64,000 nucleotides of DNA from Ophelia neglecta (lineage: Eukaryota), in NCBI GenBank assembly GCA_965285935.1, contig OZ260663.1:78864001-78928000 (forward strand), in the 5' to 3' direction. A program made the position numbers and the translations under genes. Below the pieces are notes generated by a model. The model had not been told where the DNA came from and made no database searches. It saw only the letters and a program-made list of their open reading frames with translations. Shown here piece by piece: positions 8,175-38,610 of the stretch; within the stretch, counting starts at the first letter, position 1, and each line of letters begins with the position of its first letter.

Positions 8175-8349
8175 NNNNNNNNNNNNNNNNNNNNNNNNNN
8201 NNNNNNNNNNNNNNNNNNNNNNNNNNNNNNNNNNNNNNNNNNNNNNNNNNNNNNNNNNNNNNNNNNNNNNNNNNNNNNNNNNNNNNNNNNNNNNNNNNNN
8301 NNNNNNNNNNNNNNNNNNNNNNNNNNNNNNNNNNNNNNNNNNNNNNNNN
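8175..8349. other. Assembly gap or masked segment (175 N)
   Basis: Run of N, followed immediately by ctaaccctaaccc. Confidence 0.99.
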
Positions 8350-13018: not shown

Positions 13019-13381
13019 AACACCTGGTTGATAACACCAAGTCGGAGGGTTATGTAATCCCTTTAACACTTATATTAAATTCTATATCATTTCTACTTAA
13101 ACAGGAAAAAAAAATGTTCAGTTGAATATCATGTATTTTTGTAAGCTACAACTTTCTAACAATTATTATGTTTACTTTGTTACTTATAATGTGACTGTTT
13201 TGTTCAGTTGGGAGAGTTGTTATTGGGGTATTGTTTTCTTTTAGTGTTATTTGTTACTATTCTTGAGCAATGTGAAGAGCACAAAGCACTTTGTTTGTTG
13301 ACATTTATACACCTAATTTTGCACCTTTGCATTTGTTGAAAATTTGACATTGGAAAGATTTGTTGACCATGATATTTTGAA

Positions 13382-13387
13382 AATAAA
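13382..13387 (+). promoter_or_regulatory. Probable poly(A) signal of the CDC20-like gene
   Basis: First AATAAA seen after the stop, following a U-rich 3' UTR. Confidence 0.5.
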
Positions 13388-15195: not shown

Positions 15196-15330
15196 TTAAT
15201 GTACAATCTGGCCTCCTGTTTGAAGTCTCTGTACATGGGCGTAAATTTTGAGAGCTGGCCCCAGTTTGAGTGAAAGTCCCGTAAGCACATCACTTCTCTT
15301 CATCAACAGAAGAGATTTACCATCAATCTC
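15196..15330 (-). CDS. SAMD1-like exon 7 (SAM, C-half, stop)
   Basis: ttccag| [44 protein letters not shown]. Confidence 0.9.
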
Positions 15331-18300
15331 CTGGAAAAATTAAGTCAAATTTACTTTTACTAAATTGCTGGAATAACAAGGTTTCATTAATTGTGTAATG
15401 CATGTAGTCATAATACTGTTAATGGGGTCAAAACTTTGTTTGGAACTAAAAAGAACTGAGAGCCACCCACTGTCTTAAAGTCAAATATTGCATTTGAGGC
15501 ATCAACCTGTGTGAAACATATTTTACAAATTTAAGGCTAAAATGGCATTTCTTTTGTCCTGTGTTTTACATGTAGATTGTAATCGATTAAAAACGGAGAT
15601 ATTCTTATTCAGTGATAATGGTCAACGCAAAAAGTTGGTATAAAGTTTAGATTATAATCTGCACCTAAAAATTGATTAACAGATTTCACAAACATAAGCT
15701 TCATTTCTGAGAGCACACAAGCACACATCTCTTACCTGCTCTCTGAACACATCGGCCTGTTCTGGGAATCCCATTTCGTAAAAGAAGCCCACCACATCCT
15801 CAATGGTCCAGTCAGACGCATCAGGTACCTCCAGCTTCATGGTATTAGCCAGTTTGGGGATAGGTGCTAGCATTGTGCCATTCAGCTTGGCAGTGCTGGA
15901 AATGTATTAAATCATAGGTTCAGAAAACAACAAGATCAGCATAATTCCTTCCCTTGCTAGCAGAGTACACAGCTCCCTTCTCTTCGCTTGTAGCACTCTG
16001 CCGAAAATCTGTCAATGGGGAATTCCCTTATCTAATTTGCATACGAGGCGACCTCAAGTAACCTCTTACTGACCCGGCATATATATTTCTGTCGCTGTCC
16101 TGCAAGCACTGACCGTCTTACGAATCAGATATAGCCTTCAGCAACCTTGAAGAATTTCTCCCTGCCTTGTTACCCTGTAGAATGTCTCCCTGCCTGGTAA
16201 CCCTGTAGAATGTCTCCCTGCCTGGTAACCCTGTAGGATATCCCCTTGCCTGGTAACCCAGTGGGATGTCCCCTACCTAGTAACCCCATGGGATGTCCCC
16301 CTGTCTGGTAATCCAGGAGGACGTCCCCCTGTCTGGTAGCCCTGTTTAACACCCCCTCCTGATAATCCAGTAGTATGCCCACCTGCCTGGTCACTCTGTG
16401 GGATGTCCCCCTATCTGGTAACCCTGTAGAATATCCCTGTGGAAACTCTTGTTCAGTACATATTTCTAAACTGAATATTTTTTTTTTTAAACTAATAGTC
16501 ACAATGGTAGTCTTTTTGTTGTTGAAAAGTCCACGTTGACTAACTTATAAAACCATTAAACTTAAAGTATGGAGGAGTTAAAGAGAGTATACCTTTCTTT
16601 TCTGTCCGAGTCATCTTGGAATTGAACAGGAGAATCACTTGGTGTCGGCAGGCCCACATGACCTCTGCCCTCTCGGCCTTCTCTGCCCTCCCGGCCTTCT
16701 CGACGGTAGTGCTCATGTCTGGACGTCGCCTCTGTCTCCATGTCTCTCTCCTCAAAGTCCAGCTCAGTGGTGCATTTATTACACACCCATTTACCTACAG
16801 AAAACCCAAAGTATTCCAGCTCAGACACATGTTTGGGACAAACCCATTTACTCCAAGAAACAGGGATCGCCTCCTCAGACATGCACAGTCTATTCCAATT
16901 CACACTTTAAACAATTAAGAGGACCATTCACTTGGAGCACACAGTCAATCAAAACACATACACACAGAAAACAATAATTTTACGAATAGCCTGTTAGTAG
17001 TAGCATAGGGTGCCCTCTTGGTGCACTGATAACATTATGGCGGGAAAAAAGGTATAGCTGCCAGCACACCTATTTCTGCTACACCCCATAGATGAGTGAA
17101 GTAGTAAGTCTCAAGCAAACTGGCTTCTTGTGTCATGATCGTCAAGACGCAAAATATGCGAATTACAGTAAATGATGGAAATATTTTACAGGTATTTCGT
17201 TTCATTTTGGACTTTTACATAGTTGTGCTCCATTCTCTCTCAAATGAACAATAAACCGACCAAGAAGATGCACGAATATTTGTCATCAAAATCTCTTGGA
17301 TGTAGGGGACGTTGAATATTATCGAGTAAATTGCATACTTCACTTACGCCACACTGGTTTACCTTAACAAAAACAAAATCGCTGAAGGTAAGGCTTACAA
17401 CCAATACAACTATAGGGACCAAAAAACTAAATATATCTCATTCATATGTGCTTCTGTACACACACACCAAAAAACCCTCTCAGTTGTTATATACTTCCTG
17501 TCAAACCATTCAAGTACAGACAATAACAAGAAATCCATCTCTCATATATTCTATGCTTATTTCACAACAATTTAACACAGAAAAACGCTAAAATCAAGCT
17601 CATTCATACATTAACTGGCCGGTGATTGCATGCAGGATAATGTTGTAATCTACATGTAGCCCAGTCATACATATATACTACTGCAACTTAGTTTACCATG
17701 AATAATACAGACATCCAGTTCACTCGACAAATATTTACCCAAAGAAAAAGCAGGAAGTCTAGCTCTGGTTGATGTTAAACGTTTCTAAAGTGGAGCATCA
17801 AGGGATTTACCTGTAGGCTTCTCTTTGATGGGAGGTGTGTGACAGCTCATGTGATACCCTTTGTCACATGCGTCACAGAACAGCATGGCATCCTGAAATC
17901 ACACAGCATAGCACATTAATTAACTTGATCCTCTTTAATTAGCACAAAACACAATGCAGTGCCACTGTCACATTATGATTATCACTGACAAATGCAGGTG
18001 GTTAAAATGTCAATAGACACCTGCTAATACACCATGGTAACACCTGCTAAGAATGAGTAGGAATTTAGGCTTAAGATTGGATTTGAAAATTGAAATGAAT
18101 CTGTAGTTGATTATTTAAGAAATGCTTCTTGGACAATTAATTACGAAAGTGGGAGAAGGACAGGCCTGATTCCAAGATACAAAGTACATATTAAGGTATG
18201 AATGATAAACACAATGCTGTCTACTCGACCTGACAATTACCCAATGAAGGTGTGTGCCCAAACCTAGATAATTATAAACAATTAAGTGTGTGATAGTAAA

Positions 18301-21300
18301 ATGAATAATTTATCTATTTGTTCCTGTAATATTTGCAATAGGTCAATTATTGGTGCTCAAAGGGCTCAGTAAAATCACAAAATTTAATATTAGCTGCCAA
18401 TTTATGTGGTGATACAAGACATATATACAAATATACATGTACAATAGTCCAAATCACATTTACTGCTGGTGGTAACATATTCCAGCTCTGTTTTGAATCC
18501 AGAAGAATATTGATCATGTGTCAATCAGCACAACTGATAAAGGAATATGATTTTGCAACTGATTAATTGCAACTGACTAATACATATATTTATATATTAT
18601 TAAGATCTCCCCACTACTCCAGTACATGTATTTCTACTCTAGATATCTCACCACTTTGTATAAATGATCTACAATGGTTTCTGTCTAGTGCTGACAAACT
18701 GCCTTTGGTGAATAGACTTAAGCATTGCTAATTATATTGAGACATAGCATGTGGCTCAGTAAACCAGTTTGAATACAACTAGCTCACAGACCCATACTGT
18801 GTGTGACTACCCGTAGCTCACAGACCCATACTGTCTGTGACTACCCCTAGCTCACAGACATATACTGTATGTGACTACCCCTAGCTCACAGACCCTTACT
18901 GACTGTGACTGCCCCTAGCTCACAGACAAATACAGCCTGTGAATACCCCTAGCTCACAGACACATACTGTCTGTGACTACCCCTAGCTCACAGACACATA
19001 CTGTGTGTGACTACCCGTAGCTCACAGACCCATACTGTCTGTGACTACCCCTAGCTCACAGACCCATACTGTCTGTGACTACCCCCAGCTCACAGACCCA
19101 TACTGTGTGTGAATACCCCTAGCTCACAGACCCTTACTGTCTGTGACTACCCCTAGCTCACAGACCCATACAGCCTGTGACTGCCCCTAGCTCACAGACC
19201 CATAATGTCTGTGAATACCCCTAGCTCACAGAAACATACAGTCTGTGACTACCCCTAGCTCACAGACCCATACTGTCTGTGACTACCCCTAGCTCACAGA
19301 TACATACTGTCTGTGACTACCCCTAGCTCACAGACAAATACAGCCTGTGAATACCCCTAGCTCACAGACCCTTACTGACTGTGACTGCCCCTAGCTCACA
19401 GACAAATACAGCCTGTGACTACACCTAGCTCACAGACCCTTACTGACTGTGACTGCCCCTAGCTCACAGACAAATACAGCCTGTGACTACCCCTAGCTCA
19501 CAGACACATACTGTGTGTGACTACCCCTAGCTCACAGACCCATACTGTCTGTGACTACCCCTAGCTCACAGACCCATACAGCCTTTGACTACCCCTAGCT
19601 CACAGACCCATACAGCCTGTGACTGCCCCTAGCTCACAGACCCATACTGTCTGTGAATACCCCTAGCTCACAGATACATACTGTCTGTGACTACCCCTAG
19701 CTCACAGACCCATACTGTCTGTCACTACCCCTAGCTCACAGACCCATACTGTCTGTGACTACCCCTAGCTCACAGACCCATACTGTCTGTGACTACCCCT
19801 AGCTCACAGACCCTTACAGTCTGTGACTACCCCTAGCTCACAGACCCATACAGCCTGTGACTACCCGTAGCTCACAGACACATACTGTCTGTGACTACCC
19901 CTAGCTCACAGATACATACTGTCTGTGACTACCCCTAGCTCACAGACCCTTAGTGCCTGTGACTACCCCTAGCTCACAGACCCATACTGTCTGTGACATC
20001 CCCTAGCTCACAGACCCTTACTGTCTGTGACTACCCCTAGCTCACAGACCCTTACTGTCTGTGACTACCCCTAGCTCACAGACCCATACTGTCTGTCACT
20101 ACCCCTAGCTCACAGACCCATACTGTCTGTGACTACACCTAGCTCACAGACCCATACAGCCTTTGACTACCCCTAGCTCACAGACCCATACAGCCTGTGA
20201 CTACCCCTAGCTCACAGACCCATACAGCCTGTGACTACCCGTAGCTCACAGACACATACTGTCTGTGACTACCCCTAGCTCACAGATACATACTGTCTGT
20301 GACTACCCCTAGCTCACAGACCCTTACAGTCTGTGACTACCCCTAGCTCACAGACCCATACTGTCTGTGACATCCCCTAGCTCACAGACCCTTACTGTCT
20401 GTGACTACCCCTAGCTCACAGACCCATACAGCCTGTGACTACCCCTAGCTCACAGACCCATACAGCCTGTGACTACCCGTAGCTCACAGACACATACTGT
20501 CTGTGACTACCCCTAGCTCACAGATACATACTGTCTGTGACTACCCCTAGCTCACAGACCCTTACAGTCTGTGACTACCCCTAGCTCACAGACCCATACT
20601 GTCTGTGACATCCCCTAGCTCACAGACCCTTACTGTCTGTGACTACCCCTAGCTCACAGACCCTTACTGTCTGTGACTACCCCTAGCTCACAGACCCATA
20701 CTGTCTGTCACTACCCCTAGCTCACAGACCCATACTGTCTGTGACTACACCTAGCTCACAGACCCATACAGCCTTTGACTACCCCTAGCTCACAGACCCA
20801 TACAGCCTGTGACTACCCCTAGCTCACAGACCCATACAGCCTGTGACTACCCCTAGCTCACAGACACATACTGTCTGTGACTACCCCTAGCTCACAGATA
20901 CATACTGTCTGTGACTACCCCTAACTCACAGACACATACTGTCTGTGACTACCCCTAGCTCACAGACCCATACTGTCTGTGACATCCCCTAGCTCACAGA
21001 CCCTTACTGTCTGTGACTACCCCTAGCTCACAGACCCTTACTGACTGTGACTGCCCCTAGCTCACAGACAAATACAGCCTGTGACCTACAGTCTGTGACT
21101 ACCCCTAGCTCACAGACCCATACTGTCTGTGACATCCCCTAGCTCACAGACACATACAGCCTGTGACTACCCCTAGCTCACAGACACATACTGTCTGTGA
21201 CTACCCCTAGCTCACAGACCCATACTGTATGTGACTGCCCCTAGCTCACAGACCCATACTGTATGTGACTACCCCTAGCTCACAGGCCCATACTGTCTGT

Positions 21301-24300
21301 GACATCCCCTAGCTCACAGACACATACAGCCTGTGACTACCCCTAGCTCACAGACCCATACTGTCTGTGACATCCCCTAGCTCACAGACCCTTACTGTCT
21401 GTGACTACCCCTAGCTCACAGACCCTTACTGACTGTGACTGCCCCTAGCTCACAGACAAATACAGCCTGTGACCTACAGTCTGTGACTACCCCTAGCTCA
21501 CAGACCCTTACAGTCTGTGACTACCCCTAGCTCACAGGCCCATACAGCCTGTGACTACCCCTAGCTCACAGACCCTTACAGTCTGTGACTACCCCTAGCT
21601 CACAGACCCATACTGTCTGTGACATCCCCTAGCTCACAGGCCCATACTGTCTGTGACATCCCCTAGCTCACAGACACATACAGCCTGTGACTACCCCTAG
21701 CTCACAGACCCATACTGTCTGTGACATCCCCTAGCTCACAGACACATACAGCCTGTGACTACCCCTAGCTCTCAGACACATACTGTCTGTGAATGACGCT
21801 AGCCCAGCAATTACTACCGGCTATGGTACCAGTATTAACCCATGTCACCACGGCATGCCCACATCATTACAGGGAAGCTGGATCTCCATCCTTGGCCCTC
21901 TGGTCCCAGACATTAGCATAAAGGACTTAACATTGCTTTAGCTGGATGCAGGGCATGGTGCACTCGGAGGCACAGTAGCAAGTGCCTAATCTATTCAGCC
22001 TGTCTGCAGCCCAGTCACCTGCAAGCCTGTAGATGTACTGCCAACCAGTGCTTGTATATTTACACATTATTGAAGATCTAGGGGTACAGAGGAAGGCTCT
22101 GCCCGTATTTGACACAAAATCAATACTGAATACTATGCTCACAATCTACTGCAGATGCATATCAATATGTATCTCATCTGGCCTGCAAGAGTTAATCAAA
22201 CAATAGAACTGTAGCAGCCTATAAACAGTCCTTTTAGGATTTGAGATGAAACAATTCCATCACATATTTCATGAACCTAATTTCCCTCACCCAGTGCCCA
22301 CCATGATGTGGTGTAACAGGGGCACTGCAGACCAGCTAGACCTTATGGTAACACATATTCTAGACATGGCCATGAATAACTCTTCATTATTATGCAACAA
22401 ATAAATTATATTTGGGCAAAATGCCAAGTATAAATCATGCTGCATCAACGTTTGTTCCTGCATTATCAATATTGTTTTGGTTTGTTATTTATTACCACAT
22501 TTAAGTGCCTTGGTTAATTAAAGCACTCATTAAATGGCTGGTGACAATATTAATACAAATGTCTGGGCAGCAATAACCCAGATGAAGATCAAGTACAACA
22601 AATGGACACTCAGTTTTATTATTGTTCTATCAATATTAACCAAAAACAGCATGAGGCATTGTTTTTAAAATATATATAGATTGTGTACTCACGGGGTCTC
22701 CAGAGTCCTCACATATGTAGCAGGTCTTACAGTCGATACACTGCCAGGGAGAGGTTCTCGCTCGTCTGGCCAGCTCCTCAGAATACTCCATACAAGAAGG
22801 GTGGGCTGCAGGAACACGAGAGGGCATGCTTTAGTGTGGACAGTCACAGCTAGTCAAGTCAAACATGCAATCACACTAGTTCATCAAGCAGACGACAGAC
22901 AAGCTCATCTAGTGGGAGCTGTATTATTATTAGCCTCTGATCACCCAGGCACAAGCAATAAGGAGCAGCTTTAACAGGTGAACAACAAACAGAGCTCAAA
23001 GACACAGGTCTGTGTCAAAACAAGGACACCACCAATGTAAACTGTGATCAGGTTTACCAAGAACAACGTAATCCGATGAAATATGCAGCAAATCTACTTA
23101 ATATGGGTTCTGAAATGTGTCTCAGCTCGGAAGCACCGCCATGAATGGCTGTAACAAGGCTTGAGGAGAAGATGAATCGGGCTGCCAACACCACGGGTGG
23201 CTCGATGATGGCTGGCAGTGACTAACGATGGTGCATCCTCGTTATGGGGCGCTTACACCATTCTCGGCTTGCTGCTCGCATGCCTCAATGGGACTGCAGA
23301 ATTGCGTGGCTACAATCAATGATATGTCCCAGCCACCGCGCTGGTATTCAGGTACAAGTTCCATTGATTCTGGAAGCACACACACCTGGTCACCTGCTAT
23401 AGTGCCATCACAATGGCATGGTGAATACAGTCACTGGAATAAGGCAACCTTTATAGTGCCTACTCAAGTCACTAAAAATACTTAGCACAAGGGCTAGTGT
23501 TACCATGGCAACTGCAGGGAACAGCCATTGCAGAAGAGGAATGGACCAATTGGAAAGCAAGAGAATTTGAAGGAAATGATTTGTTGCACTTCTGATTTTA
23601 GATTAATCCGACCTTTTGGACTAGCACAATTAGATATTTATGTCTTAGTGCCTACACATGTATACACATGTATATATGTATATATATACATATGCCATAA
23701 ACCATGCACATTAACACCTTACTGCTGCCAACTAGCCTAGGTTGAACAAATACTAGGAAGACCAGGGCTAGATACACAACTTGTAAAACAGTAATCATGT
23801 CAAAACTACTGTACATAATAATAGGATACACACAACTTATAAACTGTATGTTTTTCCAGGGCTTTTTTCGTTAATAAACTGACACCGTTCACGGGCGTCT
23901 TCCCCTCCCAAACTAAGCTTAATTTTTTCCCATCTCTGAATAAAAAATCCCCTCCAGAGAAAAATGCTCTTTAAAAGGGGTTTGAAATTTTAAGATAATT
24001 TGAATTTTTCTGTAATATTCCCCTTTTGTAATAATCTACGCGTCAATTTTCCCCTGCTGATGGGCTATGGGCCCCTTCCCTCTCCTTTGAAAAAAAGCCC
24101 TGTTTTCTATTTGGGGGGAGGGGGGGGGGAAGACTGGCTTTTACTGTAGCAGTTAGAAAATGCTTCCACTTTGTAGCTAATTTGTAAACTTCCAGAAGTT
24201 TAATGCATAGACATTTCCTCTGACTAGTTTTATGGCACCCTATTCCATAATGCACATGTTTTCAAAGTACTAGAGTATCATTATCCAAGAAATAATGGTG

Positions 24301-27300
24301 AGCAATTTACTTGAGCATAAAATATTCACAGATAAACATCTGTTTCATGAAAATGTTCAAAAAAAAGCCTGCCCAAAACTACTCATAAGAAGGGAACAGA
24401 TACCCCATCAAAATTATATGCAGCCACTAATTTTGCAAAACTGCAAATCTGTCAAACTCTTCAGGGGCCCTAGTACCTAGATTGCACTATAAACTTTTAC
24501 AATAGTTGGTCTTTCAGCTCAAAGATAAACACACACAAGGTTCAGTATTAAGCTCAAAGTAAAAGCCACAGCTTTACTTTCAAAAGGTTGGAGGCCCGCG
24601 GTCGGATGCTTTGGTTTTCCGAGCCAAAAAAATAAATGTGTTTCATTTTACATGGCCAAAATACTTGAGATAGATGACATAAGGTGTGGATTTTTTGTTT
24701 TTGACACTGTTGAATGTGTGAACCTAGTGAGCACTTGTAGACCAGTTTACTAAACGCCAGTCACCTGAAATTACTAAATCATTGACCAACTGCACTGGCG
24801 TTGTCTTCGACAGCCAAGAACAGCTTTGTTCAAGTTCTGTGATTAATTTCCTGCCAATTTTCTTTTTGGTGTTCACTTTTAAAATATATGTCCATAACTA
24901 CACAAGCGCTTAGAAAGATCCAAGTTTGTACAATGGAAGGCGATTTCTGAGAGAAATGCAGGAAAATATAATTTTCCACTCAATGGGGCCATAAAAAATG
25001 CCAGAGTCAGTTGAGAACCTGAAAAAAGGTCAATTTTTTGCTTTATGGCCAATCATCTGCAAGAACAATAAAATTTTTGTGACTTCTTAGTCTTTGTACA
25101 GTTTTAAGACCAATGATGTATGTGGATGCTTCTTCTTACTAGTGTATAAAAGGATGGGGGAGTTTTCATTAGTCTTTACATTTGAGGCTAGCAACATCTG
25201 ATTTACTAGAAGACATGAAGGAAGCAGAGTCCCAGGGCTTCTTCCAAGTTATTCTCATTTACATAAATCTTTGCCCTAGATAAACTTTAAAAAGCCTAGT
25301 TTAAGTGTGACATGTTTCACAAAATATATACCAGTTAAAGTCCAAACAAGTTATCAATAATATATTTGATATCAACAAATTTGCTATGTATGATGGAGTT
25401 GAGCTTCCTATGTTTGAGGCTTTATATCTGCATACTATAAATAGCCACCAAGTCCATTGTGTTATAAAGACTACATGTATAGTCGTGTTAATAAGAGAAT
25501 ATATTTTCTGCTTCATTGCTAATTGCATTGCCTTGTCTTATGCTTAGTCCTTGTTCTGGACTATTCTAACCAGACATTTACACCACTGTGTCCTTTCTCC
25601 CTTCAAAAACCAATCACTATTGATTGCTTGACAACCCAGCTTCATTTGACTCTAGATAAATGAGAGCTTTTTTCCCATTAATGTTCGTAGGTACTAAACA
25701 ATTTTTGAAAACTTGTATGTTATACATGTATGAGGCTTTCAAATTTTATACATAAATTTACATGTTTGAATTCAAATTTTTTAAGAATTATGCATTTTTT
25801 TCTGCACAGAAGCGAATAATCATGGCCCACCTTTTGCTCTGCAGTCCTTACAGATGAGCAGATCCTCTGGTTTCCCCTTGCGGTTGCAGATAGCCGAGAG
25901 GAGACAGTAGTCACAAATGGGAGCATCTTGGGGAATCAGGGCTGGAGTAGTAACCTTCACTTCCTCTTTACTCCCGGAGCTTTCCCGGCGAGACTTCTTG
26001 TGGAATGGGTACGACTCAAAGTCAGGCCCCAAACTCTTCTTTATTTTCTGAAAAATAAGGACTTGTTCAAAAGTCTTTGCTTCAACTGGCTCAGACAAGC
26101 CTAGACTAAAGGACTAATACCAAGAATTAAACTAGGGATAGTTAACCTGTATCATGGAAATTAGTTTAACACTAAATTATAAAGTTTAAAAGGCAATGTG
26201 TCTTTGAAAGGAACATGCCTTCAAGGCACGTAACTGCATGAGCCAATTTTTTATACTTCGGTACGTACCAACTCGCGGTTCCCAACCATGGGTAGAAGGA
26301 TAGGTATCTGCCGCTACCATGCTCAGTGGTGCGGTTGTGGATAGGCGACTGTGCTTTTGTTCGATTTTCAAAGTGACAGTAGAGAAACGTATACTATTAA
26401 CGAATCACTGACATGCTAGGAGCACCTTCAAACAGGTGATGTGTGCATAAATCTAAACAAGAACCAATCTTAATTGCTCTGTTTGGCCTTACGTCAATCC
26501 CATCACATGGGAAGAACCCGAGCAAACCATTGGCCTAAGCAAGAAATTTGGTATCTGAACCGGCCAATTTGACAGGTTTTCATAAATAGGGAGATGGTTA
26601 ACAATATTAAATTTGATAAATCAAATTTCATAAATAGTTATAGGGTGCCCCTTTCATTCTTGTGGTCTGCTCAAGTATTCCCTTCCGAGACTCTCATAGT
26701 ACAGCACCAATCAAATTGTCTTTGGATTTAATCGAAATAAAAGCGGAAATTGGACAAGGAAGACATATGTTAATTAAGTAACCAGCTACTCAGTTTGTAT
26801 AACATGATAGTTAGCACACCATGGTGTATTGACAACACCAAGTACATAAACACTTAAGGCTTTGTCTTAAGGCCACCCACTGCAGCAAGTCCATTAATCA
26901 GATCCACTTTGGCAAACATCTACGATTGTATAAGCTGGTAAAAACCAGGTTAGATAACCATGTACAATATACATGTATGTCCATGAGCTGTGTACAATAC
27001 TGACCGAATCCTCAATCAATAAACCTCAATACTTCAATCAACAGTACCATATGTAATAAACATTACCAGCAAGGTTGTATCCATCACTCAATTATCCAAA
27101 TTTATGTTTATTTAGATTGTTGCATGGGAATTTATCTACCAGAGTTCATTACAGCTCACACACAGGTGATACACAACAAGTACTCCGACATATCACCACA
27201 CAACAGGTACAGGCAGGCTCTCCTACAGTATACATGTATCATGTCATGACAGCTATATGGCTACAGCTGCTTTCATGTACCTTTGTGTATCAATAACTAC

Positions 27301-27909
27301 ATTACAGACTGCTAAAAAAGTATGAAACGGTATTACAAAATAAGAGACTAACTGCTCTTGAAGCTCTGCCTTCCATGCTGACCATGTGGTGAACCTCACT
27401 GACTGAAGAACTCAGGATTTCAGAACATTCACTAGAGTTTCTCACTGGAGTCTGGAAAACTATCAGAAATGACCATGGACGTTTTCGGGTGAGAAGCAAC
27501 AGTGTGCCATGCAGTGAATGTTGTCTGTCTGTGGACATCAGCGACCTCTCAAGACAGAGTAGGTTATCACCAGCTTTATGCAGCACTAGCTCTGGTAATA
27601 GCCCCAGTACATAAATGTTGTATTGATTTACCAACTCAATGGTGCTTTCATTTGTTTCACTTCATATAGAGGCTATCAATGTAGTAACATCAGACTGGGA
27701 GCATCCCCCTGGTGAATGACACAGTAATTACATGTGCTTGTCAGTTGAGCTACACGAGGTATATAAACATACTGCTATCATTTCTATGGCTATCAAACAT
27801 CCTGTGGTTGATGTTTTTTCAAATAGCCACAAGTAAATAAGTGTTCCTGAATCCATAATGGCCATCTTTATACTGTACAAGTAAACTAGACTACTGGACA
27901 TAGCTTGAT

Positions 27910-27946
<37 letters not shown>

Positions 27947-30900
27947 CTAACATAGAAATCTTAAACTGTACTGCCTCTAAATATAAAGCTGTGTGAATGA
28001 TAAAAGGCAAAGCAGAAATGACTATTCTTTAATACTGGATTTTCATTGTCTAAAAAATATGTAGGTGAGCTTTTAGTGGTAGTTACAAAAATAATTAAAT
28101 TAAGTTGAAATTGAAGTGCATGAATACAAAGAGTGTCAATTATTAGGGGCATTGCGTTTTGTTTTATTTATGGCAAATTTAGAGTTTGCATAAAAAATAA
28201 TTCCTCAAAGTATAATGATTAAAGGAGACTTCATGAATTTGTAAAATGGGTGGTGTAGACTTGGAGGAAAAGTTGTGGTAAAGATACTACTTGTATAAAA
28301 ACATATTATATGAGTAACGATTTAGTGAGCGCCAATAGGGAATTTCAAAATAACATTCCTCCTGAAAAAGGAAGAGTATGAATGGTGGAACACAATTTGA
28401 ATAAGAGGCAGCAGCAGCAGCCCCCACTGGCCCCCTAGCAACTAGCAATAACAGGCAGCAGCAGCTCACACTGGCCCCCCAGCAACAAGCAATAACAGGC
28501 AGGAGCAGCCCCCACAGGCCCCTAGCAACTAGCAATAACAGGCAGCAGCAGCTCACACTGGCCCCCCAGCAACAAGCAATAACAGGCAGCAGCAGCTCCC
28601 ACTGGCCCCCCAGCAACAAGCAATAACAGGCAGGAGCAGCTCCCACTGGCCCCCCAGCAACAAGCAATAACAGGCAGGAGCAGCCCCCACAGGCCCCCAG
28701 CAACCAGCAATAACAGGCAGCAGCAGCCCCCACTGGCCCCTAGCAACTAGCAATAACAGGCAGCAGCAGCTCCCACTGGCCCCCCAGCAACAAGCAATAA
28801 CAGGCAGGAGCAGCTCCCACTGGCCCCCCAGCAACAAGCAATAACAGGCAGGAGCAGCTCCCACTGGCCCCCCAGCAACAAGCAATAACAGGCAGGAGCA
28901 GCCCCCACAGGCCCCCAGCAACCAGCAATAACAGGCAGCAACAGCCCCCACTGGCCCCTAGCAACTAGCAATAACAGGCAGCAGCAGCCCCCACTGGCCC
29001 CCCAGCAACTAGCAATAACAGGCAGCAGCAGCTCCCACTGGCCCCCCAGCAACAAGCAATAACAGGCAGGAGCAGCTCCCACTGGCCCCCCAGCAACAAG
29101 CAATAACAGGCAGGAGCAGCCCCCACAGGCCCCCAGCAACCAGCAATAACAGGCAGCAGCAGCCCCCACTGGCCCCTAGCAACTAGCAATAACAGGCAAC
29201 AGCAGCTCCCACTGGCCCCCCAGCAACAAGCAATAACAGGCAGCAGCAGCCCCCACTGGCCCCCCAGCAACTAGCAATAACAGGCAGGAGCAGCCCCCAC
29301 TGGCCCCCCAGCAACAAGCAATAACAGGCAGCAACAGCCCCCACTAGCCCCCCAGCAACTAGCAATAACAAGCAGCAGCAGCCCCCACTGGCCCCCCAGC
29401 ATCCAGCAATAACAGGCAGCAGCAGCCCCCACTGGCCCCCCAGCAACAAGCAATAACAGGCAGCAGCAGCCCCACTGGCCCCCCAGCAACAAGCAATAAC
29501 AGGCAGCAGCAGCCCCCACTGGCCCCCAGCAATAACAGGCAGCAGCAGCCCCCACCGAACCCCCTAGCAAGTAGAAATAACAGGCAGGAGCAGCCCCCAC
29601 AGGGCCCCCTAGCAAGTAGCAATAACAGGCAGCAGCAGCCCCCACTGGCCCCCAGCAATAACAGGCAGCAGCAGCCCCCACCGAACCCCCTAGCAAGTAG
29701 AAATAACAGGCAGGAGCAGCCCCCACAGGGCCCCCCAGCGACTAGCAATAACAGGCAGGAGCAGCCCCCACTGGCCCCCCAGCAACAAGCAGTAACAGGC
29801 AGCAGCAGCCCCCACTGGCCTGCCCGGCTTTCCCATACTTTTACCTCAGACCAACTGTGGGGACAATTTCACATATTCACTAATTGAGTAAAACTCAATG
29901 CAATTAATACCTGCATGTTTCTTACACATTTTATAATGCAAAAATGAGTGTGTGGGCTACAACAGAAAAGCAGCCTTTTTAGGCAAGTGATTCTATTCTT
30001 TCAAGGACAAACATTGGCTGTCAACCGCAAATTAAGTTTTGGAACTCTATCCCTCTCAAACTCGATTTGCCAATTTATCTTCAGTCCAATAATCAATGTT
30101 ACAACTGTCCCATCTTAGTTGCCAATTTGCCTTGCCAATGGATAATGCTCAATAAAAAAAACCTTCAGCACTCCCTGTCCACTCTATGTAGTAGTGCAAG
30201 GCTAGTGGGTGTGGCAAAAATATTCATTGGCACTTATTGTCAGTTACATTGGCTGTTTTTTAAATAAAGATATAAATTTCATGAGTTATTTTAATATTTT
30301 TCAAATGAGTTTGTGTGTGCTTTTGTGTCAGACAACCATAGGAAGTTTTTCAACAATTTAAACAAAATTTAAATTTCTGCCAGTGTAATAAATCCTATGT
30401 ATTATATAGTTTGAAGTTGCTGTGACTTATTGCACCTGGTTAAGGGCTGGGAAATAATGCATCATTCGGTGGTGTTGTCTAATGATTTCTTTAAAAATCA
30501 TGTCTCAAATGTCAATAAAATATGGACCTTGTGGTAGTAATAACTCTTTCATGATCAGACATCAGACAAGTAATTACTTCAATGCACAATATACAAAGTA
30601 ATACCTCCTGTGTGCAAAGGTTATACCCCTATGTTGGCTGACAGGGTAATACATACATGTACCTCCTGTGTGGTGTTATCCCACAGGGTTACACCTCCGA
30701 TGTTATTTTATCTGACAGGGAAATACCTCCAGTGTGATCTTATCCTTGTATGTGATTTTTTCCCACAGGTTTATACATCCTATGTGATTTTATCCAACAA
30801 GGTGATATATGCTGTGTGACTTTACAACCTATATGACTTGCTGAAATTTGGCTCAAAATGTGAAATATTTCTCCATATAGGATAATGGAGCTCATGTGAT

Positions 30901-33900: not shown

Positions 33901-36900
33901 TTAAAATTGTTTGCATCTGCTGGAACAAACAAAGGCATAGTATTTGTTAACGAGTGAATGTTCTCTTTTTTTTTGCAATTTCAGTTGGCAACAAACTTTT
34001 TTTTGGCTTTGTTTATCCTTTTTTTTAGTTAGTGAGGTTATACAATTAATGAAAAATGTAAATTCAAACTATTTGACAGTTCTTATTTATTCTCATATGG
34101 TTTAACTGTTTCTCCTGGTGACTATAGTCAGTGAAGCGAACATTGAGATATTGGCAGATATGAAATACTTACTAATAAACAGTTTCTAGTGCTATTTCAA
34201 TTTTAATAGGCATGGATAGTCAGGCAAGGGCCAGACCATTGATGGTATTATTAGGTGCCACACCCATGATACATGGCAGAAATATTTATAGTTTGGGATT
34301 ATCTGCTCACATTAAGGAGTGGCATGTTGTAATTCTGACTGTGACCTAAAAGAACCTGGATTCCTTTAAGGAATAGCACTATACTTATGGGTCACTTTGT
34401 AAGTTTGTATAATATACACATATACATAGACAAAGTGGAGGATTGTTCAATGCAATAGCTTATCCTCTATTTACCATGTTATATATAAATAACTTCTTTA
34501 CTGTTTCTCCTTTTGATTTTGTCTCATTCATATCAACAGTCACACAAACACATCACCTAGAGCTTCTTTACTGATTGGTTTTTATCCTGTCTGACCTGTG
34601 AATTAAGACCACCCAAGGGACTGGCAATACTGGTCTGATTATTGAGGTAGGCTTCACTGTATTATGTATTATAAATATATATATACAGTGAAACCTGCCT
34701 TAAAGACCACCTCTATAATCAGACCACCTGTTAATTCAGACCACCAATATGAGGACCGTGATGTATCCTCTTTAAATGTTAAATAACCTGTCTAAACAGA
34801 CCACCTCTGACATCAGACCAGTGTTTTCCAGCCCCTTTGGTAATCTTAATTCCCAGGTTTCACTGTTTATATATCATTTTATAAGGGAAGCTTTCTCTGA
34901 TATAAAATTCACTGTTACAGACAATTTCTTTCATTCTAGAAAATTAATTGCCAATTATCGTAGCCTCAAATGGAAGTATCTGGGGTAACATATTTTAGCC
35001 CCTCCCACGCCACATGGGATACTATATATGCACTGCCCGCTGCAGATGCTTACACAAATAAAATTGCAAAATGCAATGTTGAATTTTCTCATTTGCCAGA
35101 CAACAGACTGACCACCAATAGGGAAAGATCTGATTTTATTTTTTGCGACCCAGAGGTTCCAAATTTTGACACCAGGCGGAGCTTTATTTTTGAAAATTGA
35201 TGTTTTTAGTCATATCTCAAACACTTCGATGGAATCAAATCAAACCAAAAGGAATAGTTGTTCCTAGATATTTGCATTGCTATGCATGGTTAACTTTCAA
35301 AGTAAAAAATTCTGCCATCAGAGGGAGCTTTAAGTAAAAAATATAGACCTTTTTCTTTATGTCACTCGAATCATTTATCTCAAGATTCATTTTGACATGC
35401 ATGAATGCCCTTTAATTTCCAAATTTTAATACCAGGGGCAGGTTTATTGTCAATTTTTTTCATTTCTTGCCATACATCAACCGTTTGATGGAATCATTTC
35501 AAACCAAAGACAATCAAGTGTTTGATTTGTATTGTCGTTCTTGGCTGACCATAAAGATCCAAATTCTGCCACCAGAGGGAGCCTTTTGGCAAATATCCCC
35601 AGGGGCATTCAGGGATATACCCTTTTCATTCATGAGCAAATGTGCATGCCTCATTTACTAATGCCTATACCCTGTACTTGCACACACACTAAAAGACTAA
35701 TTGTGTCATAACCTGTTTTATTTTCTTACACACATTACAAAAAGACAGCTTGGATGTATGTTTGTAAATAAAGGGAACAGACAGTAACTGATTCCAGCAA
35801 GCTGCCCCTTGAGACTCCCATTCATTGCTAACATCTATGTCAAAAGACTTTAACAGGTGAAAAGGAGAAATCTTAATATCCTCTTATCAAAGCAACCAAG
35901 CCCAAAACACAGTTTAGTATGGTATATATGCAAATAATTGAGTATGATATCCGTTCTTACTGTATCATAGGGTCATACGTGTCAAATGCCTTTGAGTTAA
36001 GTGCCATTAAATAAAAACTCTAAAGGATAGACTGCTACAATAGTGTGCGGTGGTTTGTGTTGGGATCACTGCAAAAGTCTTATCTGTGTAAATGCTTGAA
36101 GACCAGTGCCCCAGTTTTTACCAGGCTAATTGTGCTATTCATCAACAGAGTCACTGTCAATATTCATTATTCAGCTGGCTGTTAATTTTTGAGTTGCTGT
36201 CACTATTCGTCCCTGTAACTATGCACGCACTATTAAAACTGAACTGCATATCAATTACTTAAATCTACTCAACACAGATGGATCCCCAACATGAATAACG
36301 TATATTAAGTAACAGCATGTGCATCGGAAGGTGAAATTTAAGCAACATCACACTGTACATCAAGGCTAGAGCAACTTAATGTCTCTATCCGCCATCATAC
36401 TGCAGTACAGTATTAATCTACCTGTGTTTTGCAATGCGGCAGTCAGTGCTATACCATCGTATAGGTGAAACTGGTTGACATAATCAAGAATCATATTACT
36501 ACAGCTGTATTACTACTCACTAAAGGCTAGTGATTAAGTATTAGCAGACTAGTAAATAATGGAAGTAACCATGTTTTCTTAATCTTTCACAATTTCACAT
36601 AATATCATATTCAAAGAGAAAAGTACCGTATAGGTCCTAGCGTTTGGATGCCACAACAGTTACTGCTTGTAGCTAACAGATCCACTTGCTGCTCATACAT
36701 TTTACATATTTGTTTAGAGCAACAATATTGTCATCACTGTTTAAGTCTTTTTAAAATTTTAATTTTTGTAATTTGGGGACTTCTGCTAAATAAAAACAAC
36801 CAAAAATATACAGTTTACACTTAACAGGGTCCAAGGTTGTAGATGTGCAATGTATGCCACACGACACAGGACGGGCCAACAAACATGGTCATTGAACTTT

Positions 36901-38610
36901 TTCTTGGCACATTTCCATGAGCTTCCCATCTGCTTTGCCAGTTGGGACATTGATTATAAATGCTGAATGATGGAGACAGTTAAAGGATATTTTATTAGGA
37001 GGTTGGCCTAAGAAGGTCCACTAACTCTCCAAAGGATACATGCTGCTTGGATTAAAAAGGGAAATACTGTAACATTGAGGTAAAATTGCAAATATAAACT
37101 GTTCATGGCTTATTCATGTATATCTAAAACATGTAGTCTCTGTGAAAAATGAAGAAGTCTCTTAAAGAAGCACTTATTTTAACAAGGAACAACATTTTGA
37201 ATAAGTGTTAAGCATTGTCTAATAAAAGTCAGTGAGTCTTTAAAGCAAGTTATCAAAAAGCCTAAAAAATCCTTTTATTTTGACTTGTAGCTAAAGACAT
37301 ATTATAACAACTTAAGAATTTTTTTTAAATATAAATAACAAAAACAAACAAATATTGGGCAAAATATATTTTCTCCCAGAAATATGCCTACTTAAAATAT
37401 TTTAACAAAAACTCTTCACAACCTCTTTCCTTAGCAACTAAAATACTACAGATATATCCATCTTTCACAGCATATTTTCTTGTTGGTTTAAAAAAGTGAA
37501 TTAAGTCTGGACATCAGAAAATTATTTTTAAGCATCACCAGCTAAACCTCCCTATATAGCTGTAAATATGTGTTCTATAGGATAAGCAAAATCCATTTAA
37601 ATCTAACATTGGACAATTTCCAAAAAGTAATGAAGTCTAACTGGTAATGAGCAGTTTGTAAAAAAAACATTCAAATTTTCTATGAACAAATTATCTATGG
37701 AAAGTTGATGATTCTACCAATTGTTCTTTTTATAGACTTGACATTGCGCGCACATCGCAAGAAATAATATGCGCACGATAACAATCGATTGAAATAGGGA
37801 CTGAGCAGGCAAAAAAACGTCTAGTAAAATTGTAAATAATTGAAGCATAATGCAAACCTTTCGCTTGGTGCCTGGAGGTCTTCCTTTTTTTACCGGGCTG
37901 CCTGTTTTCCCTCCACTGCCCGGTGTGATGGGTGGGTTGGGAGCGGGGCGGGGAGAAGTGAGAGGGGGTGGTTCAGGGCCGTTCACCCCAGCTTCCGCAG
38001 CTTCTCCCAAGCTAAGACCAGCCGCAGCCGCAGATGCGCTGCTTTTAGCGGGAGACGCGCTCAGACCGCTCCCACTAGTATTTGGGCTGGATTTTACTTT
38101 AGAAGGTGTCTTTTTTGGATTTGCACCAATTATGTACTGATCTCCTAGATAAATATCCAATCTACCCATGTCCATTTCTTTTTCCAGTATTTTCTGTAGC
38201 ATTTTCTCTTTTAATATGGTATCCGGATCATGGTCCGACAGCCACTTTTCTAGTTCGCTGAAAGTACAGCCGCGTTTGCCATCCCCACCGGCCGCTTTAT
38301 CCGCATCAGAAAAAGCTCTGACAGCTGCCGCTATTTTTCTACTGACATCATTTGCATTAGGTACATGCCCAGTGACATGACTCTTCCTCCATTTTGCCGC
38401 ATTTCTATAACTGGTACTGCCTTTATAATCTACTTTAATGACCACTTCGGTAGCCACCAATCGTTCAAGGTCGGTTTCGATCTCTTCGTAACTTAGCTGA
38501 TGTTTCCGTTCCACCATGTGACATATTCGCTCTAAGTCCGGCCGAGCTTTCCTTTTGCGCAGTTGATCAATTGTCTCGAGAATCCAATCTTTATATTTCG
38601 GCTCACCCAT
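15196..38610 (-). CDS. SAMD1: SAMD1/atherin-like chromatin protein with a KAT6A/B-like N-terminal module (WH1, WH2, AT-hook-like, double PHD finger, SAM), 7 exons, 553 aa
   Basis: complement(join(15196-15330,15736-15895,16593-16794,17811-17892,22693-22805,25831-26047,37858-38610)) = 1662 nt, open, all GT-AG with phases 0,1,0,1,2,0. Kozak accaccATGG. WH1 [22 protein letters not shown]...[11 protein letters not shown]; [33 protein letters not shown]; DPF PICDYC...HPSC...WQCIDCKTC...[12 protein letters not shown]...WVCNKC. Confidence 0.9.
15736..15895 (-). CDS. SAMD1-like exon 6 (SAM, N-half)
   Basis: ttccag| ...[26 protein letters not shown] |gtaaga. Confidence 0.9.
16150..16442. repeat. Intronic 28-bp minisatellite, about 10 copies (ccctgtagaatgtctccctgcctggtaa)
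   Basis: Period 28 at 16173, 16201 and 16229, decaying rightwards. Confidence 0.85.
16593..16794 (-). CDS. SAMD1-like exon 5 (end of PHD2, linker)
   Basis: ctgtag| GKWVCNKC...[13 protein letters not shown]...LPTPSDSP...KE |gtatac. Confidence 0.85.
17811..17892 (-). CDS. SAMD1-like exon 4 (PHD2)
   Basis: tttcag| [27 protein letters not shown] |gtaaat. Too short to appear in the ORF track. Confidence 0.9.
18779..21792. repeat. Intronic 34-bp hairpin minisatellite, about 88 copies (ctagctcacagacccatactgtctgtgactaccc)
   Basis: Direct tandem repeats, each with an internal inverted repeat tcacagac/gtctgtga; higher-order blocks recur. Confidence 0.97.
22693..22805 (-). CDS. SAMD1-like exon 3 (PHD1/PHD2)
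   Basis: ctgcag| [12 protein letters not shown]...[18 protein letters not shown] |gtgagt. Confidence 0.9.
23857..24102. mobile_element. MITE with CAGGGCTTTTTT terminal inverted repeats
   Basis: cagggctttttt ... aaaaaagccctg; ttttc is present on both flanks. Confidence 0.7.
25831..26047 (-). CDS. SAMD1-like exon 2 (start of PHD1)
   Basis: tttcag| KIKKSLG...[30 protein letters not shown] |gtgggc. Confidence 0.9.
27911..27946. repeat. Poly-G tract (36 nt)
   Basis: Homopolymer; shorter G runs occur near 5647 and 7264. Confidence 0.9.
28406..29820. repeat. Intronic 43-44-bp minisatellite, about 32 copies (gcagcagcagcccccactggccccccagcaacaagcaataacag)
   Basis: Direct tandem repeats; source of the spurious Cys/Leu/Gly-rich ORFs. 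Confidence 0.96.
34686..34865 (+). mobile_element. Tc1/mariner-type MITE (CAGTGAAACC TIR); a partial copy lies at about 34595-34658
   Basis: ta|cagtgaaacctg...caggtttcactg, internal agaccacc repeats; homologous to the copies at 55680 and 61444. Confidence 0.8.
37858..38610 (-). CDS. SAMD1-like exon 1 (two winged helices, Pro/Ser/Ala linker, KKGRPPG)
   Basis: ATG at 38610; donor aag|gtttgc. Confidence 0.9.

What the first reader, a model, noticed from the sequence alone, without database searches (positions are those of the whole stretch)
15196..38610. SAMD1-KAT6 hybrid architecture: the KAT6 reader module is coupled to a SAM domain instead of a MYST enzyme
Seen: one clean 553-aa spliced ORF with WH1, WH2, an AT-hook-like motif, a double PHD finger and a SAM domain. 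Known: vertebrate SAMD1 has only WH and SAM; it binds unmethylated CpG and represses through SAM polymerisation and L3MBTL3. KAT6A/B have WH1-WH2-DPF followed by a MYST acetyltransferase. Here WH1 ([22 protein letters not shown]) and the SAM are SAMD1-type, while WH2 and the DPF follow the KAT6 order and sequence pattern. Inference: this may be the ancestral form of SAMD1, sharing its origin with the KAT6 N-terminus. It could read unmethylated CpG plus acylated H3K14 and act as a non-catalytic, polymerising competitor of KAT6 at promoters. Pipelines would probably mislabel it as a KAT6B-like acetyltransferase. I cannot tell whether this architecture has already been described.
Basis: partly seen in the sequence, partly recalled or inferred. 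Interest (0 to 1): 0.8.

Follow-up and report, generated by a model that had tools for sequence, protein, structure and literature searches.

The report
Ancestral-type SAMD1 gene with PHD fingers
This is an intact invertebrate gene that joins the CpG-binding and SAM domains of the vertebrate repressor SAMD1 to a second winged helix and a double PHD finger; it belongs to an old animal family that databases name "KAT6B-like", and it looks like the ancestral form of SAMD1/SAMD13.

Summary
Seven minus-strand exons (38610 to 15196, all introns GT-AG) give a 553-codon frame. It encodes WH1, a second winged helix (WH2), an AT-hook-like motif, a double PHD finger (DPF) and a SAM domain.

- **Domain types.** WH1 and SAM are SAMD1-type: human SAMD1 structures are the best PDB matches, well ahead of KAT6A or PHC3/L3MBTL3. 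The DPF is DPF-class, only marginally nearest KAT6A.
- **No MYST.** No MYST domain lies on this chromosome. A true KAT6 gene (WH1-WH2-DPF-MYST) sits on another contig.
- **Distribution.** The architecture is not unique.
- **Vertebrates.** In a tree, vertebrate SAMD1 and SAMD13 form one clade arising from this family. Shark SAMD13 keeps WH1-WH2-SAM. SAMD1's "small helical domain" looks like a WH2 remnant.
- **Literature.** SAMD1 is called vertebrate-specific. Fly Lint-O (two PHD fingers plus SAM, an L(3)mbt partner) has not been linked to SAMD1 in the papers searched.
- **Likely function.** A non-catalytic CpG and H3-tail reader that oligomerises and recruits L(3)mbt. This is inferred.

No RNA data exist for this genome. 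The joined protein was never searched.

The parts
37858..38610 (-). Exon 1 (251 codons, starts at the ATG at 38610): WH1, WH2, disordered Ser/Ala/Pro-rich linker, AT-hook-like end
   Evidence: Translation; donor GT at 37857-37856. The start MGEPKYKDW matches orthologue N-termini. tblastn hits 38610 to 37858.
38401..38589 (-). WH1 (aa 8-70), a SAMD1-type CpG-binding winged helix
   Evidence: Pfam SAMD1_WH E=7.8e-31. PDB phmmer: SAMD1 6lui 83.5 bits against KAT6A 7y43 44 bits. Foldseek: 6lui TM 0.92, 59% identity. VIA Z 13.9. Eight of the nine SAMD1 DNA-contact residues are identical (PMC8115922, with the alignment).
38119..38367 (-). WH2 (about aa 82-164), a linker-histone-like winged helix
   Evidence: The AF2 model shows helices 86-106, 117-127 and 135-147 and strands 151-154 and 158-161, with block-mean pLDDT 85-95 over that range. 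VIA matches to H1 globular domains: 8h0v_u Z 10.2, rmsd 1.6, 21% identity; 7k5y_U Z 10.1. The aligned region of orthologues hits Pfam Linker_histone (P0025). hhalign to own KAT6 WH2: P 81.5%, E 1e-5.
37858..37890 (-). AT-hook-like basic motif [11 protein letters not shown] (aa 241-251)
   Evidence: Read. The GRP...KRK core is conserved in most rows of alignment A1. There is no Pfam hit, so the label rests on the motif only.
25831..26047 (-). Exon 2: linker and the N-terminal half of PHD1 (first two Cys pairs)
   Evidence: Acceptor AG and donor GT read. PDB phmmer best hit is the KAT6A DPF (25.6 bits), then KAT6B, DPF3, DPF2.
22693..22805 (-). Exon 3: C-terminal half of PHD1 (HPSC...WQCIDC) and the first Cys pair of PHD2
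   Evidence: PDB phmmer: KAT6A 39.7 bits, PHF10 33.8, KAT6B 32, DPF3 31.4. 92% identical to the chiton orthologue.
17811..17892 (-). Exon 4: core of PHD2 ([13 protein letters not shown])
   Evidence: Pfam PHD E=3.5e-8. PDB phmmer: DPF3 33 bits, about equal to DPF2, KAT6B and KAT6A.
16593..16794 (-). Exon 5: last Cys pair of PHD2 (KWVCNKC) and a charged Arg/Glu-rich linker
   Evidence: tblastn. The two variants seen in the DNA runs (16679, 16684) are synonymous (with my own codon reading).
15736..15895 (-). Exon 6: linker and the N-terminal half of the SAM domain
   Evidence: The only PDB phmmer hits are SAMD1 SAM chains (E=3e-5). Variants at 15823 and 15826 are synonymous.
15196..15330 (-). 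Exon 7: C-terminal half of the SAM domain and stop codon TAA (15198-15196)
   Evidence: PDB phmmer: SAMD1 SAM 6luk E=5.5e-13, with PHC3 and L3MBTL3 next at about 1e-5. 27 of 32 aligned residues are identical to human SAMD1. L495, L509 and L513 (self-association and L3MBTL3 contacts, PMC11969672) are conserved.

Best explanation
This is the single-copy member, in this invertebrate genome, of an old animal gene family (Cnidaria plus Bilateria) with the architecture WH1-WH2-AT-hook-DPF-SAM. It is the pro-orthologue of vertebrate SAMD1 and SAMD13. Both vertebrate genes lost the double PHD finger. SAMD1 eroded WH2 into the 'small helical domain', and mammalian SAMD13 kept only the SAM. The family very probably includes Drosophila Lint-O. 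It has no enzyme domain. The inferred mechanism is as follows. WH1 binds unmethylated CpG. WH2 and the AT-hook add non-specific nucleosomal or linker-DNA contacts. The DPF reads the H3 tail. The SAM self-associates and forms a heteropolymer with the SAM of L(3)mbt, tethering that repressor to CpG-rich promoters. Shown here: gene structure, domain identities, nearest relatives, distribution, and absence of MYST. Inferred: all binding activities and the repressive role.
For: The gene model and its colinearity with orthologues are established.

WH1 is SAMD1-type. It scores 83.5 bits to SAMD1 against 44 bits to KAT6A. Fold matches give TM 0.92 and Z 13.9. Eight of nine DNA-contact residues are conserved: R18, R20, K21, R23, Y62, K63, S67 and R69, with only R56 changed to H31 (PMC8115922).

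The SAM is SAMD1-type by a margin of more than 20 bits. The ML residue L495 and the EH residues L509 and L513 are conserved (PMC11969672).

The genome has only two SAMD1_WH loci. The other lies about 8 kb upstream of a MYST domain and is the true KAT6. No MYST hit lies on the window's contig C5. There is only one SAMD1-type SAM in the genome. An L(3)mbt-type gene (three MBT repeats plus SAM) is present at C5:50.66 Mb.

Orthologues with PF21524+PF00628+PF00536 occur in corals, a sea anemone, molluscs, annelids, a brachiopod, a bryozoan, a nemertean, chelicerates, a centipede, echinoderms, hemichordates and amphioxus.

Two intron-less contigs of 2.3-2.5 kb carry the whole ORF. One begins with a SMART template-switch oligo, so it is cDNA-derived.

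In the careful ML tree, vertebrate SAMD1+SAMD13+lamprey form one clade (97/87), split into SAMD13 (100/100) and SAMD1 (92/81), arising among the invertebrate members.

Shark SAMD13 is WH1 plus Linker_histone/SHD plus SAM. hhalign chain: invertebrate WH2 to shark WH2, P 98.8%, E 9e-17; shark WH2 to SAMD1 SHD, P 64%, E 6e-5.

For function, SAMD1 recruits L3MBTL3 through SAM-SAM contacts (PMC8115922, PMC11969672), and Lint-O (two PHD fingers plus SAM) binds L(3)mbt through its SAM and co-represses its targets (PMC9535798).
Against: - There is no RNA evidence for this genome, so the junctions rest on consensus splice signals and on homology.
- The tree has a single KAT6 outgroup on a long branch, and its backbone is an unresolved polytomy. 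The vertebrate clade is not placed with the other deuterostomes.
- Direct invertebrate WH2 to SAMD1 SHD similarity is weak (hhalign P 14%, E 2e-3).
- Lint-O was never compared by sequence here. The link rests on its published architecture and on the published BLAST match to SAMD13.
- No binding activity was tested. In Lint-O, a mutant with eight zinc-binding Cys changed still repressed, so histone reading by the DPF may not be essential.
- One DNA-contact residue differs (R56 to His).
Confidence: 0.72

Rival explanations
1. The protein is a decoy version of KAT6. It uses the same WH1-WH2-DPF reader module to occupy KAT6 sites (unmethylated CpG plus acylated H3K14) and so antagonises acetylation by competition and polymerisation, independently of L(3)mbt.
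For: It has the same domain order as KAT6. PHD1 scores best to the KAT6A DPF. WH2 aligns with this genome's KAT6 WH2. Both genes coexist in the genome.
Against: WH1 is much closer to SAMD1 than to KAT6A (83.5 against 44 bits). The DPF is not clearly KAT6-type. The characterised relatives act through L(3)mbt/L3MBTL3 and KDM1A (PMC8115922, PMC9535798). Nothing here bears on competition.
Confidence: 0.15
2. Mosaic origin. The DPF did not come with WH1-WH2 from a KAT6-like ancestor. It was acquired separately from a d4/DPF (BAF45)-type gene, so the likeness to the KAT6 N-terminus is partly convergent domain shuffling.
For: All three intron positions and phases inside the DPF match this genome's d4/DPF-like gene, while its KAT6 and PHF10-like genes share only the first two. 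The PHD2 exon scores highest to DPF3.
Against: PHD1 exons score a few bits higher to KAT6A than to DPF3, DPF2 or PHF10. The orthologue P0011 scores 115 bits to the KAT6A DPF against 104 to DPF3. The WH1-WH2-DPF order is otherwise seen only in KAT6. The missing third intron in KAT6 can be a simple loss.
Confidence: 0.2
3. Artefact of the gene model. The WH/PHD exons and the SAM exons belong to two neighbouring genes and are never joined in one mRNA.
For: There is no RNA-seq for this genome. The three runs found are genomic DNA and show no spliced joints.
Against: PHD2 itself is split over E3-E5, and E5 continues in phase into E6 and E7. Orthologues in more than ten phyla have the same colinear protein. 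Intron-less contigs in other species carry WH1+PHD+SAM in one ORF, and one of them carries a cDNA adapter. The four exonic variants seen are all synonymous.
Confidence: 0.03

Closest known systems
Vertebrate SAMD1 (Atherin)
   Same: The N-terminal SAMD1-type winged helix has 58-59% identity and nearly all CpG-contact residues. The C-terminal SAM has about 84% identity over the last exon, including the self-association and L3MBTL3-contact leucines. The overall order is WH, then a helical domain, then a disordered linker, then SAM.
   Different: SAMD1 has no PHD fingers. Its second domain is reduced to the 'small helical domain' (Pfam PF24971), and it has a Pro/Ala-rich disordered region. The literature describes it as vertebrate-specific (PMC8115922).
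Vertebrate SAMD13 (the cartilaginous-fish form)
   Same: Shark and ray SAMD13 proteins keep WH1, a WH2 that passes the Pfam Linker_histone cut-off, and a SAMD1-type SAM. In the tree they are sister to SAMD1 within this family.
   Different: They have no DPF. Mammalian SAMD13 retains only the SAM domain.
Drosophila Lint-O (CG2662)
   Same: It is published as two PHD fingers plus a C-terminal SAM. It binds L(3)mbt through SAM-SAM contacts and co-represses its targets. SAMD13 is its BLAST-based human counterpart (PMC9535798). This matches the C-terminal half of the window protein.
   Different: No WH domains were annotated in Lint-O, but that annotation may predate the Pfam SAMD1_WH model. Its sequence was not compared here, so membership is inferred.
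KAT6A/KAT6B/Enok (MOZ/MORF)
   Same: The order is WH1-WH2-DPF. WH1 belongs to the same Pfam family, WH2 is H1-like, and the DPF is of the same class with two shared intron positions.
   Different: KAT6 carries a MYST acetyltransferase and long C-terminal regions and has no SAM. Its WH1 is a distinct subtype. This genome has a separate true KAT6 on contig C8.
d4/DPF1-3 (BAF45) and PHF10
   Same: They have a tandem PHD (DPF) module of near-equal sequence similarity. All three DPF introns are shared with this genome's d4-like gene.
   Different: They have no WH1, WH2 or SAM. d4 proteins have an N-terminal DPF1-3_N/requiem domain and a C2H2 finger, which are absent here.

Membership tests
SAMD1/SAMD13 family | N-terminal SAMD1-type winged helix with the CpG-contact residues | tested here: met
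   Pfam PF21524 E=7.8e-31. Best PDB hit is SAMD1 6lui. Eight of nine contact residues are identical.
SAMD1/SAMD13 family | C-terminal SAM of the SAMD1 subtype | tested here: met
   For E7 and E6 the best PDB hits are SAMD1 SAM chains (E 5.5e-13 and 3e-5); E6 hit nothing else, and for E7 other SAM families start at 1e-5. L495, L509 and L513 are conserved.
SAMD1/SAMD13 family | Phylogenetic grouping with SAMD1/SAMD13 rather than KAT6 | tested here: inconclusive
   The vertebrate SAMD1+SAMD13 clade (97/87) arises among the invertebrate members. However, only one KAT6 outgroup was available and the backbone is unresolved.
SAMD1/SAMD13 family | Small helical domain (PF24971) between WH and SAM | tested here: inconclusive
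   There is no Pfam hit on the window's E1. The aligned WH2 region of orthologues and of shark SAMD13 hits both PF24971 and Linker_histone. The hhalign chain is given.
SAMD1/SAMD13 family | SAM-mediated binding of L3MBTL3/L(3)mbt and repression | not testable with these tools
   An L(3)mbt-type gene (three MBT repeats plus SAM) exists in this genome. No interaction test was run.
KAT6 (MYST) acetyltransferases | MYST/MOZ_SAS catalytic domain | tested here: not met
   A stop codon follows the SAM directly. There is no PF01853 hit anywhere on contig C5; the four MYST loci lie elsewhere.
KAT6 (MYST) acetyltransferases | N-terminal WH1-WH2-DPF module | tested here: met
   WH1 is nevertheless of the SAMD1 subtype.
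d4/DPF1-3 (BAF45) | DPF module together with the N-terminal DPF1-3_N domain and a C2H2 finger | tested here: not met
   The DPF is present. No DPF1-3_N or convincing C2H2 hit appears in any exon.
Lint-O (CG2662) orthologues | Two PHD fingers followed by a SAMD13-like SAM | tested here: met
   The architecture is met.
Lint-O (CG2662) orthologues | Reciprocal sequence orthology to Drosophila CG2662 | not tested
   No Drosophila sequence was reachable. The three word searches listed no insect in their top 120 rows. Atlas clusters show arthropod proteins with WH1+PHD.

The most novel reading that the evidence does not exclude
SAMD1 is not a vertebrate invention. It is the stripped-down descendant of a pre-bilaterian reader, WH1-WH2-AT-hook-DPF-SAM, that coupled recognition of unmethylated CpG to H3-tail (possibly H3K14-acyl) reading and to L(3)mbt recruitment. 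On this reading the same gene gave rise to fly Lint-O, to shark-type SAMD13 and to SAMD1, whose 'small helical domain' is a vestigial WH2. Its WH1-WH2-DPF block shares a common ancestor with the KAT6 N-terminus. One ancient reader module would then have been wired to opposite outputs, acetylation in KAT6 and repression here.
Probability: 0.45. Interest if true: 0.7.

Novelty: new variant of a known kind. Interest (0 to 1): 0.58.

Why it matters
Three separately studied chromatin stories would become one. They are SAMD1 with L3MBTL3 at mammalian CpG islands, Lint-O with L(3)mbt in fly germline-gene silencing and brain tumours, and the CpG-reading N-terminus of the leukaemia genes KAT6A/B.

The Lint-O authors asked what the human counterpart is and where the PHD function went. 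The SAMD1 authors call the protein vertebrate-specific. A full-length WH1-WH2-DPF-SAM protein in easily cultured invertebrates makes both questions testable. One can ask what the DPF adds to CpG reading, and whether SAMD1's disordered region replaced it.

There is also a practical point. Many RefSeq and UniProt entries for this family are named "histone acetyltransferase KAT6B-like" although they have no catalytic domain.

Tried and rejected
- **RNA support.** The one run search found three runs of one sample. Laid on 15100-18100 they cover introns and exons evenly and show no joints, so they are genomic DNA. They give no junction evidence.
- **Joined protein.** Domains split by introns (PHD1, PHD2, SAM) were assessed exon by exon, or on full-length orthologues (P0011, P0132) as proxies.
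- **Introns as a marker of KAT6 ancestry.** Rejected. Two DPF introns are common to KAT6, d4, PHF10 and this gene, and the third is shared with d4 only.
- **Finding Drosophila Lint-O.** A word search with a centipede DPF-SAM query listed no insect among the 120 best of its 217 hits. The Atlas search, set to skip WH1-bearing clusters, gave only PHD-only or PHC-like clusters below 0.9, so these are leads only.
- **Complex prediction.** Not used. The SAM has no single reference in this genome, and a pass would not have changed my odds.
- **Neighbouring ORFs.** The long ORFs at 8938-9396, 48897-49430 and 58043-58552 have no Pfam hit.
- **Organism.** Not determined. The closest named orthologues are lophotrochozoan, but the tree does not place the window reliably.
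- The N run at 8175-8349 was left alone.

Full report
**Observation**

The finding describes a spliced gene on the minus strand, and reading the sequence confirms it.
- E1 runs from the ATG at 38610 to 37858 (251 codons).
- The other exons are E2 26047-25831, E3 22805-22693, E4 17892-17811, E5 16794-16593, E6 15895-15736 and E7 15330-15199, followed by TAA at 15198-15196.
- All six introns are GT...AG, the phases are consistent, and the sum is 1659 nt = 553 codons.

Every statement about the window's protein rests on single exons given by reference, or on full-length orthologues used as proxies.

**Support for the gene model**

- Pfam on the single exons finds SAMD1_WH in E1 (E=7.8e-31), PHD in E4 and SAM_1 in E7.
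- tblastn of eleven full-length orthologues against the window hits the seven exons in order. HSP ends fall on the exon ends and no query residues are left over, so no exon is missing.
- The stop follows the SAM directly, at the same place as the orthologues' C-termini.
- Four variants seen in exons in the DNA runs (15823, 15826, 16679, 16684) are all synonymous by my codon reading.
- No RNA evidence exists for this genome. The only runs that hold the sequence are genomic DNA, with even depth over introns and no joints.
- Transcript-level evidence exists in other species. Two Logan contigs of 2,490 and 2,338 nt carry uninterrupted 485-codon ORFs with WH1, PHD and SAM. One begins with a SMART template-switch oligo, so it is cDNA-derived.

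**The domains**

*WH1.* It matches the crystal structure chain of human SAMD1 (6lui) at 83.5 bits, against 44 bits for KAT6A WH1.
- An AlphaFold model of E1 (pLDDT above 90 in WH1 and 85-95 in WH2) superposes on 6lui with TM 0.92, 59% identity and Z 13.9. It superposes on KAT6A WH at TM 0.80-0.84 and 33-38% identity.
- Stielow et al. list nine DNA-contacting residues: R43, R45, K46, R48, R56, Y87, K88, S92 and R94 (PMC8115922). Eight are identical here (R18, R20, K21, R23, Y62, K63, S67, R69). R56 is His31.

*WH2.* Residues 82-164 form a second three-helix, two-strand winged helix.
- It aligns structurally with linker-histone globular domains (Z about 10, rmsd 1.5-2.2, 21% identity) and with other WH domains.
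- The same region of orthologues passes Pfam Linker_histone.
- It aligns with the WH2 of this genome's KAT6 (hhalign P 81.5%, E 1e-5).

*AT-hook-like motif.* E1 ends in [11 protein letters not shown], and the motif is conserved in the family.

*DPF.* Exons 2-5 encode two complete C4HC3 fingers of the DPF class.
- Subtype is not resolved. E2 and E3 score a few bits higher to KAT6A, while E4 scores highest to DPF3.
- The chiton orthologue scores 115 bits to KAT6A, 104 to DPF3, 102 to KAT6B, 98 to DPF2 and 88 to PHF10.

*SAM.* The two SAM exons hit SAMD1 SAM chains first, by a wide margin (E 5.5e-13, against 1e-5 for PHC3 and L3MBTL3).
- Leucines L495, L509 and L513 are conserved. These mediate SAMD1 self-association and L3MBTL3 binding (PMC11969672).
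- The printed alignment of the L495R crystal construct fixes the register.

**No MYST, and a separate KAT6**

- The genome (762 Mb) has only two SAMD1_WH loci: this one and C8:65.225 Mb.
- The C8 locus lies about 8 kb upstream, on the same strand, of the strongest MOZ_SAS hit. DPF exons lie between them. That is the true KAT6.
- The other three MYST loci are on C7, C1 and C8. None is on C5.
- The window gene is also the only SAMD1-type SAM in the genome and one of four DPF genes.

**Intron test for KAT6 ancestry of the DPF**

The window gene has three introns inside the DPF:
- before HPSC (phase 1);
- before D-x-MLFCD (phase 0);
- in the Gly codon before KWVC (phase 1).

This genome's KAT6 and PHF10-like genes share the first two. 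Its d4/DPF-like gene shares all three. The introns therefore show that all DPF modules are related, but they do not single out KAT6 as the source.

**Distribution and relation to SAMD1**

- Word searches with E1, with an orthologue's SAM, and with an orthologue's DPF-SAM returned well over a hundred full-length proteins carrying PF21524+PF00628+PF00536.
- These come from corals and a sea anemone, molluscs, annelids, a brachiopod, a bryozoan, nemerteans, chelicerates, a centipede, echinoderms, hemichordates and amphioxus.
- Most are named "histone acetyltransferase KAT6B-like" or "KAT6A-like", and a few "atherin".
- No vertebrate hit has PHD fingers.
- Vertebrates have SAMD1 (WH1, PF24971 'small helical domain', SAM). 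In cartilaginous fishes, 'SAMD13' proteins have WH1, a domain that passes both the Linker_histone and SHD cut-offs on the same residues, and a SAM. Mammalian SAMD13 has only the SAM.
- Profile comparisons link invertebrate WH2 to shark WH2 (P 98.8%, E 9e-17) and shark WH2 to the SAMD1 SHD (P 64%, E 6e-5). The direct invertebrate-to-SHD comparison is weak.
- A careful ML tree of the N-terminal region (50 rows, 267 columns) gives a vertebrate clade at 97/87. It splits into SAMD13 (100/100) and SAMD1 plus lamprey (92/81), and arises from an unresolved set of invertebrate lineages.
- The only outgroup was this genome's own KAT6, so the tree cannot by itself test SAMD1-type against KAT6-type. That rests on the score margins above.

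**Literature**

- Stielow et al. state that "SAMD1 is a vertebrate-specific protein" (PMC8115922).
- The KAT6A and MORF papers relate WH1 to SAMD1, but none of the terms searched in them turned up a WH-PHD-SAM protein (PMC9881136, PMC9908889).
- Yamamoto-Matsuda et al. describe Drosophila Lint-O (CG2662) as two PHD fingers plus a SAM. It binds L(3)mbt through the SAM domains and co-represses its targets. They name SAMD13 as the BLAST-based human counterpart and ask where the PHD function went (PMC9535798).
- No paper in the searchable library contains both "Lint-O" and "SAMD1", and "SAMD1-like" occurs only in two papers from the SAMD1 group.
- I could not find the architecture or the unification described. 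The library is incomplete, so this is not proof.

**Most likely mechanism (inferred)**

- The protein is a non-catalytic chromatin reader and scaffold.
- WH1 docks on unmethylated CpG. The genome has C5-methyltransferase hits, so methylation is probably present.
- WH2 and the AT-hook add nucleosomal DNA contacts, as shown for MORF WH2.
- The DPF engages the H3 tail.
- The SAM homo-oligomerises and co-polymerises with L(3)mbt. The L(3)mbt gene, with three MBT repeats and a SAM, is present at C5:50.66 Mb.

**Verdict**

The gene itself is an ordinary member of a widespread family. The interest lies in that family, which appears undescribed and misnamed, and which bridges SAMD1, SAMD13, Lint-O and KAT6.

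Noticed in passing
proteins P0152, P0158, P0163, P0159 (cartilaginous-fish 'SAMD13'); P0184 (turtle SAMD1): Shark and ray SAMD13 proteins are 370-520 aa long and carry WH1, a domain that passes both the Pfam Linker_histone and SAMD1_SHD cut-offs on the same residues, and a SAM. Mammalian SAMD13 has only the SAM. This suggests that SAMD1's 'small helical domain' is a degenerate WH2 and that SAMD13 is a decaying paralogue of SAMD1.
   Followed up: partly
proteins P0223, P0224, P0236, P0238, P0250 (scorpion, ticks): Chelicerates have a second DPF-SAM gene. In it the N-terminal WH1 is replaced by a THAP zinc finger (PF05485), which looks like a swap of DNA-binding domain on the same scaffold.
   Followed up: no
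window 15908-16109 (intron 5 of the gene): A stretch of about 200 bases has contig word depth of 4,800-15,500 in three DNA runs, against about 10-30 around it. It is a very high-copy interspersed repeat.
   Followed up: no
window 28411-29820, 18777-21792, 16143-16437 (introns 1, 3, 5); also 1406-5125 and 42867-44362: There are large GC-rich minisatellite arrays: 44 bp x 32, 34 bp x about 80-90, 28 bp x 11, 24 bp x 154 and 54 bp x 28. They produce long spurious ORFs and explain the GC and skew spikes in the composition profile.
   Followed up: partly
G000:C8:65216700-65225700 (loci L002, L003, L012): This genome's true KAT6 gene has a WH1-WH2 exon, three DPF exons and MYST exons on the minus strand. 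Its PHD2 lacks the third DPF intron that the window gene and the d4-like gene (C1:47.69 Mb) share.
   Followed up: yes
window 15823, 15826, 16679, 16684: Four single-base variants in exons 5 and 6 appear in contigs of the DNA runs. All four are synonymous (V, P, R, E codons), which fits purifying selection on the model's reading frame.
   Followed up: yes
window 8175-8349: A run of 175 N (gap or masked).
   Followed up: no
I did not examine it. It shows that the next gene is unrelated to MYST.
   Followed up: no
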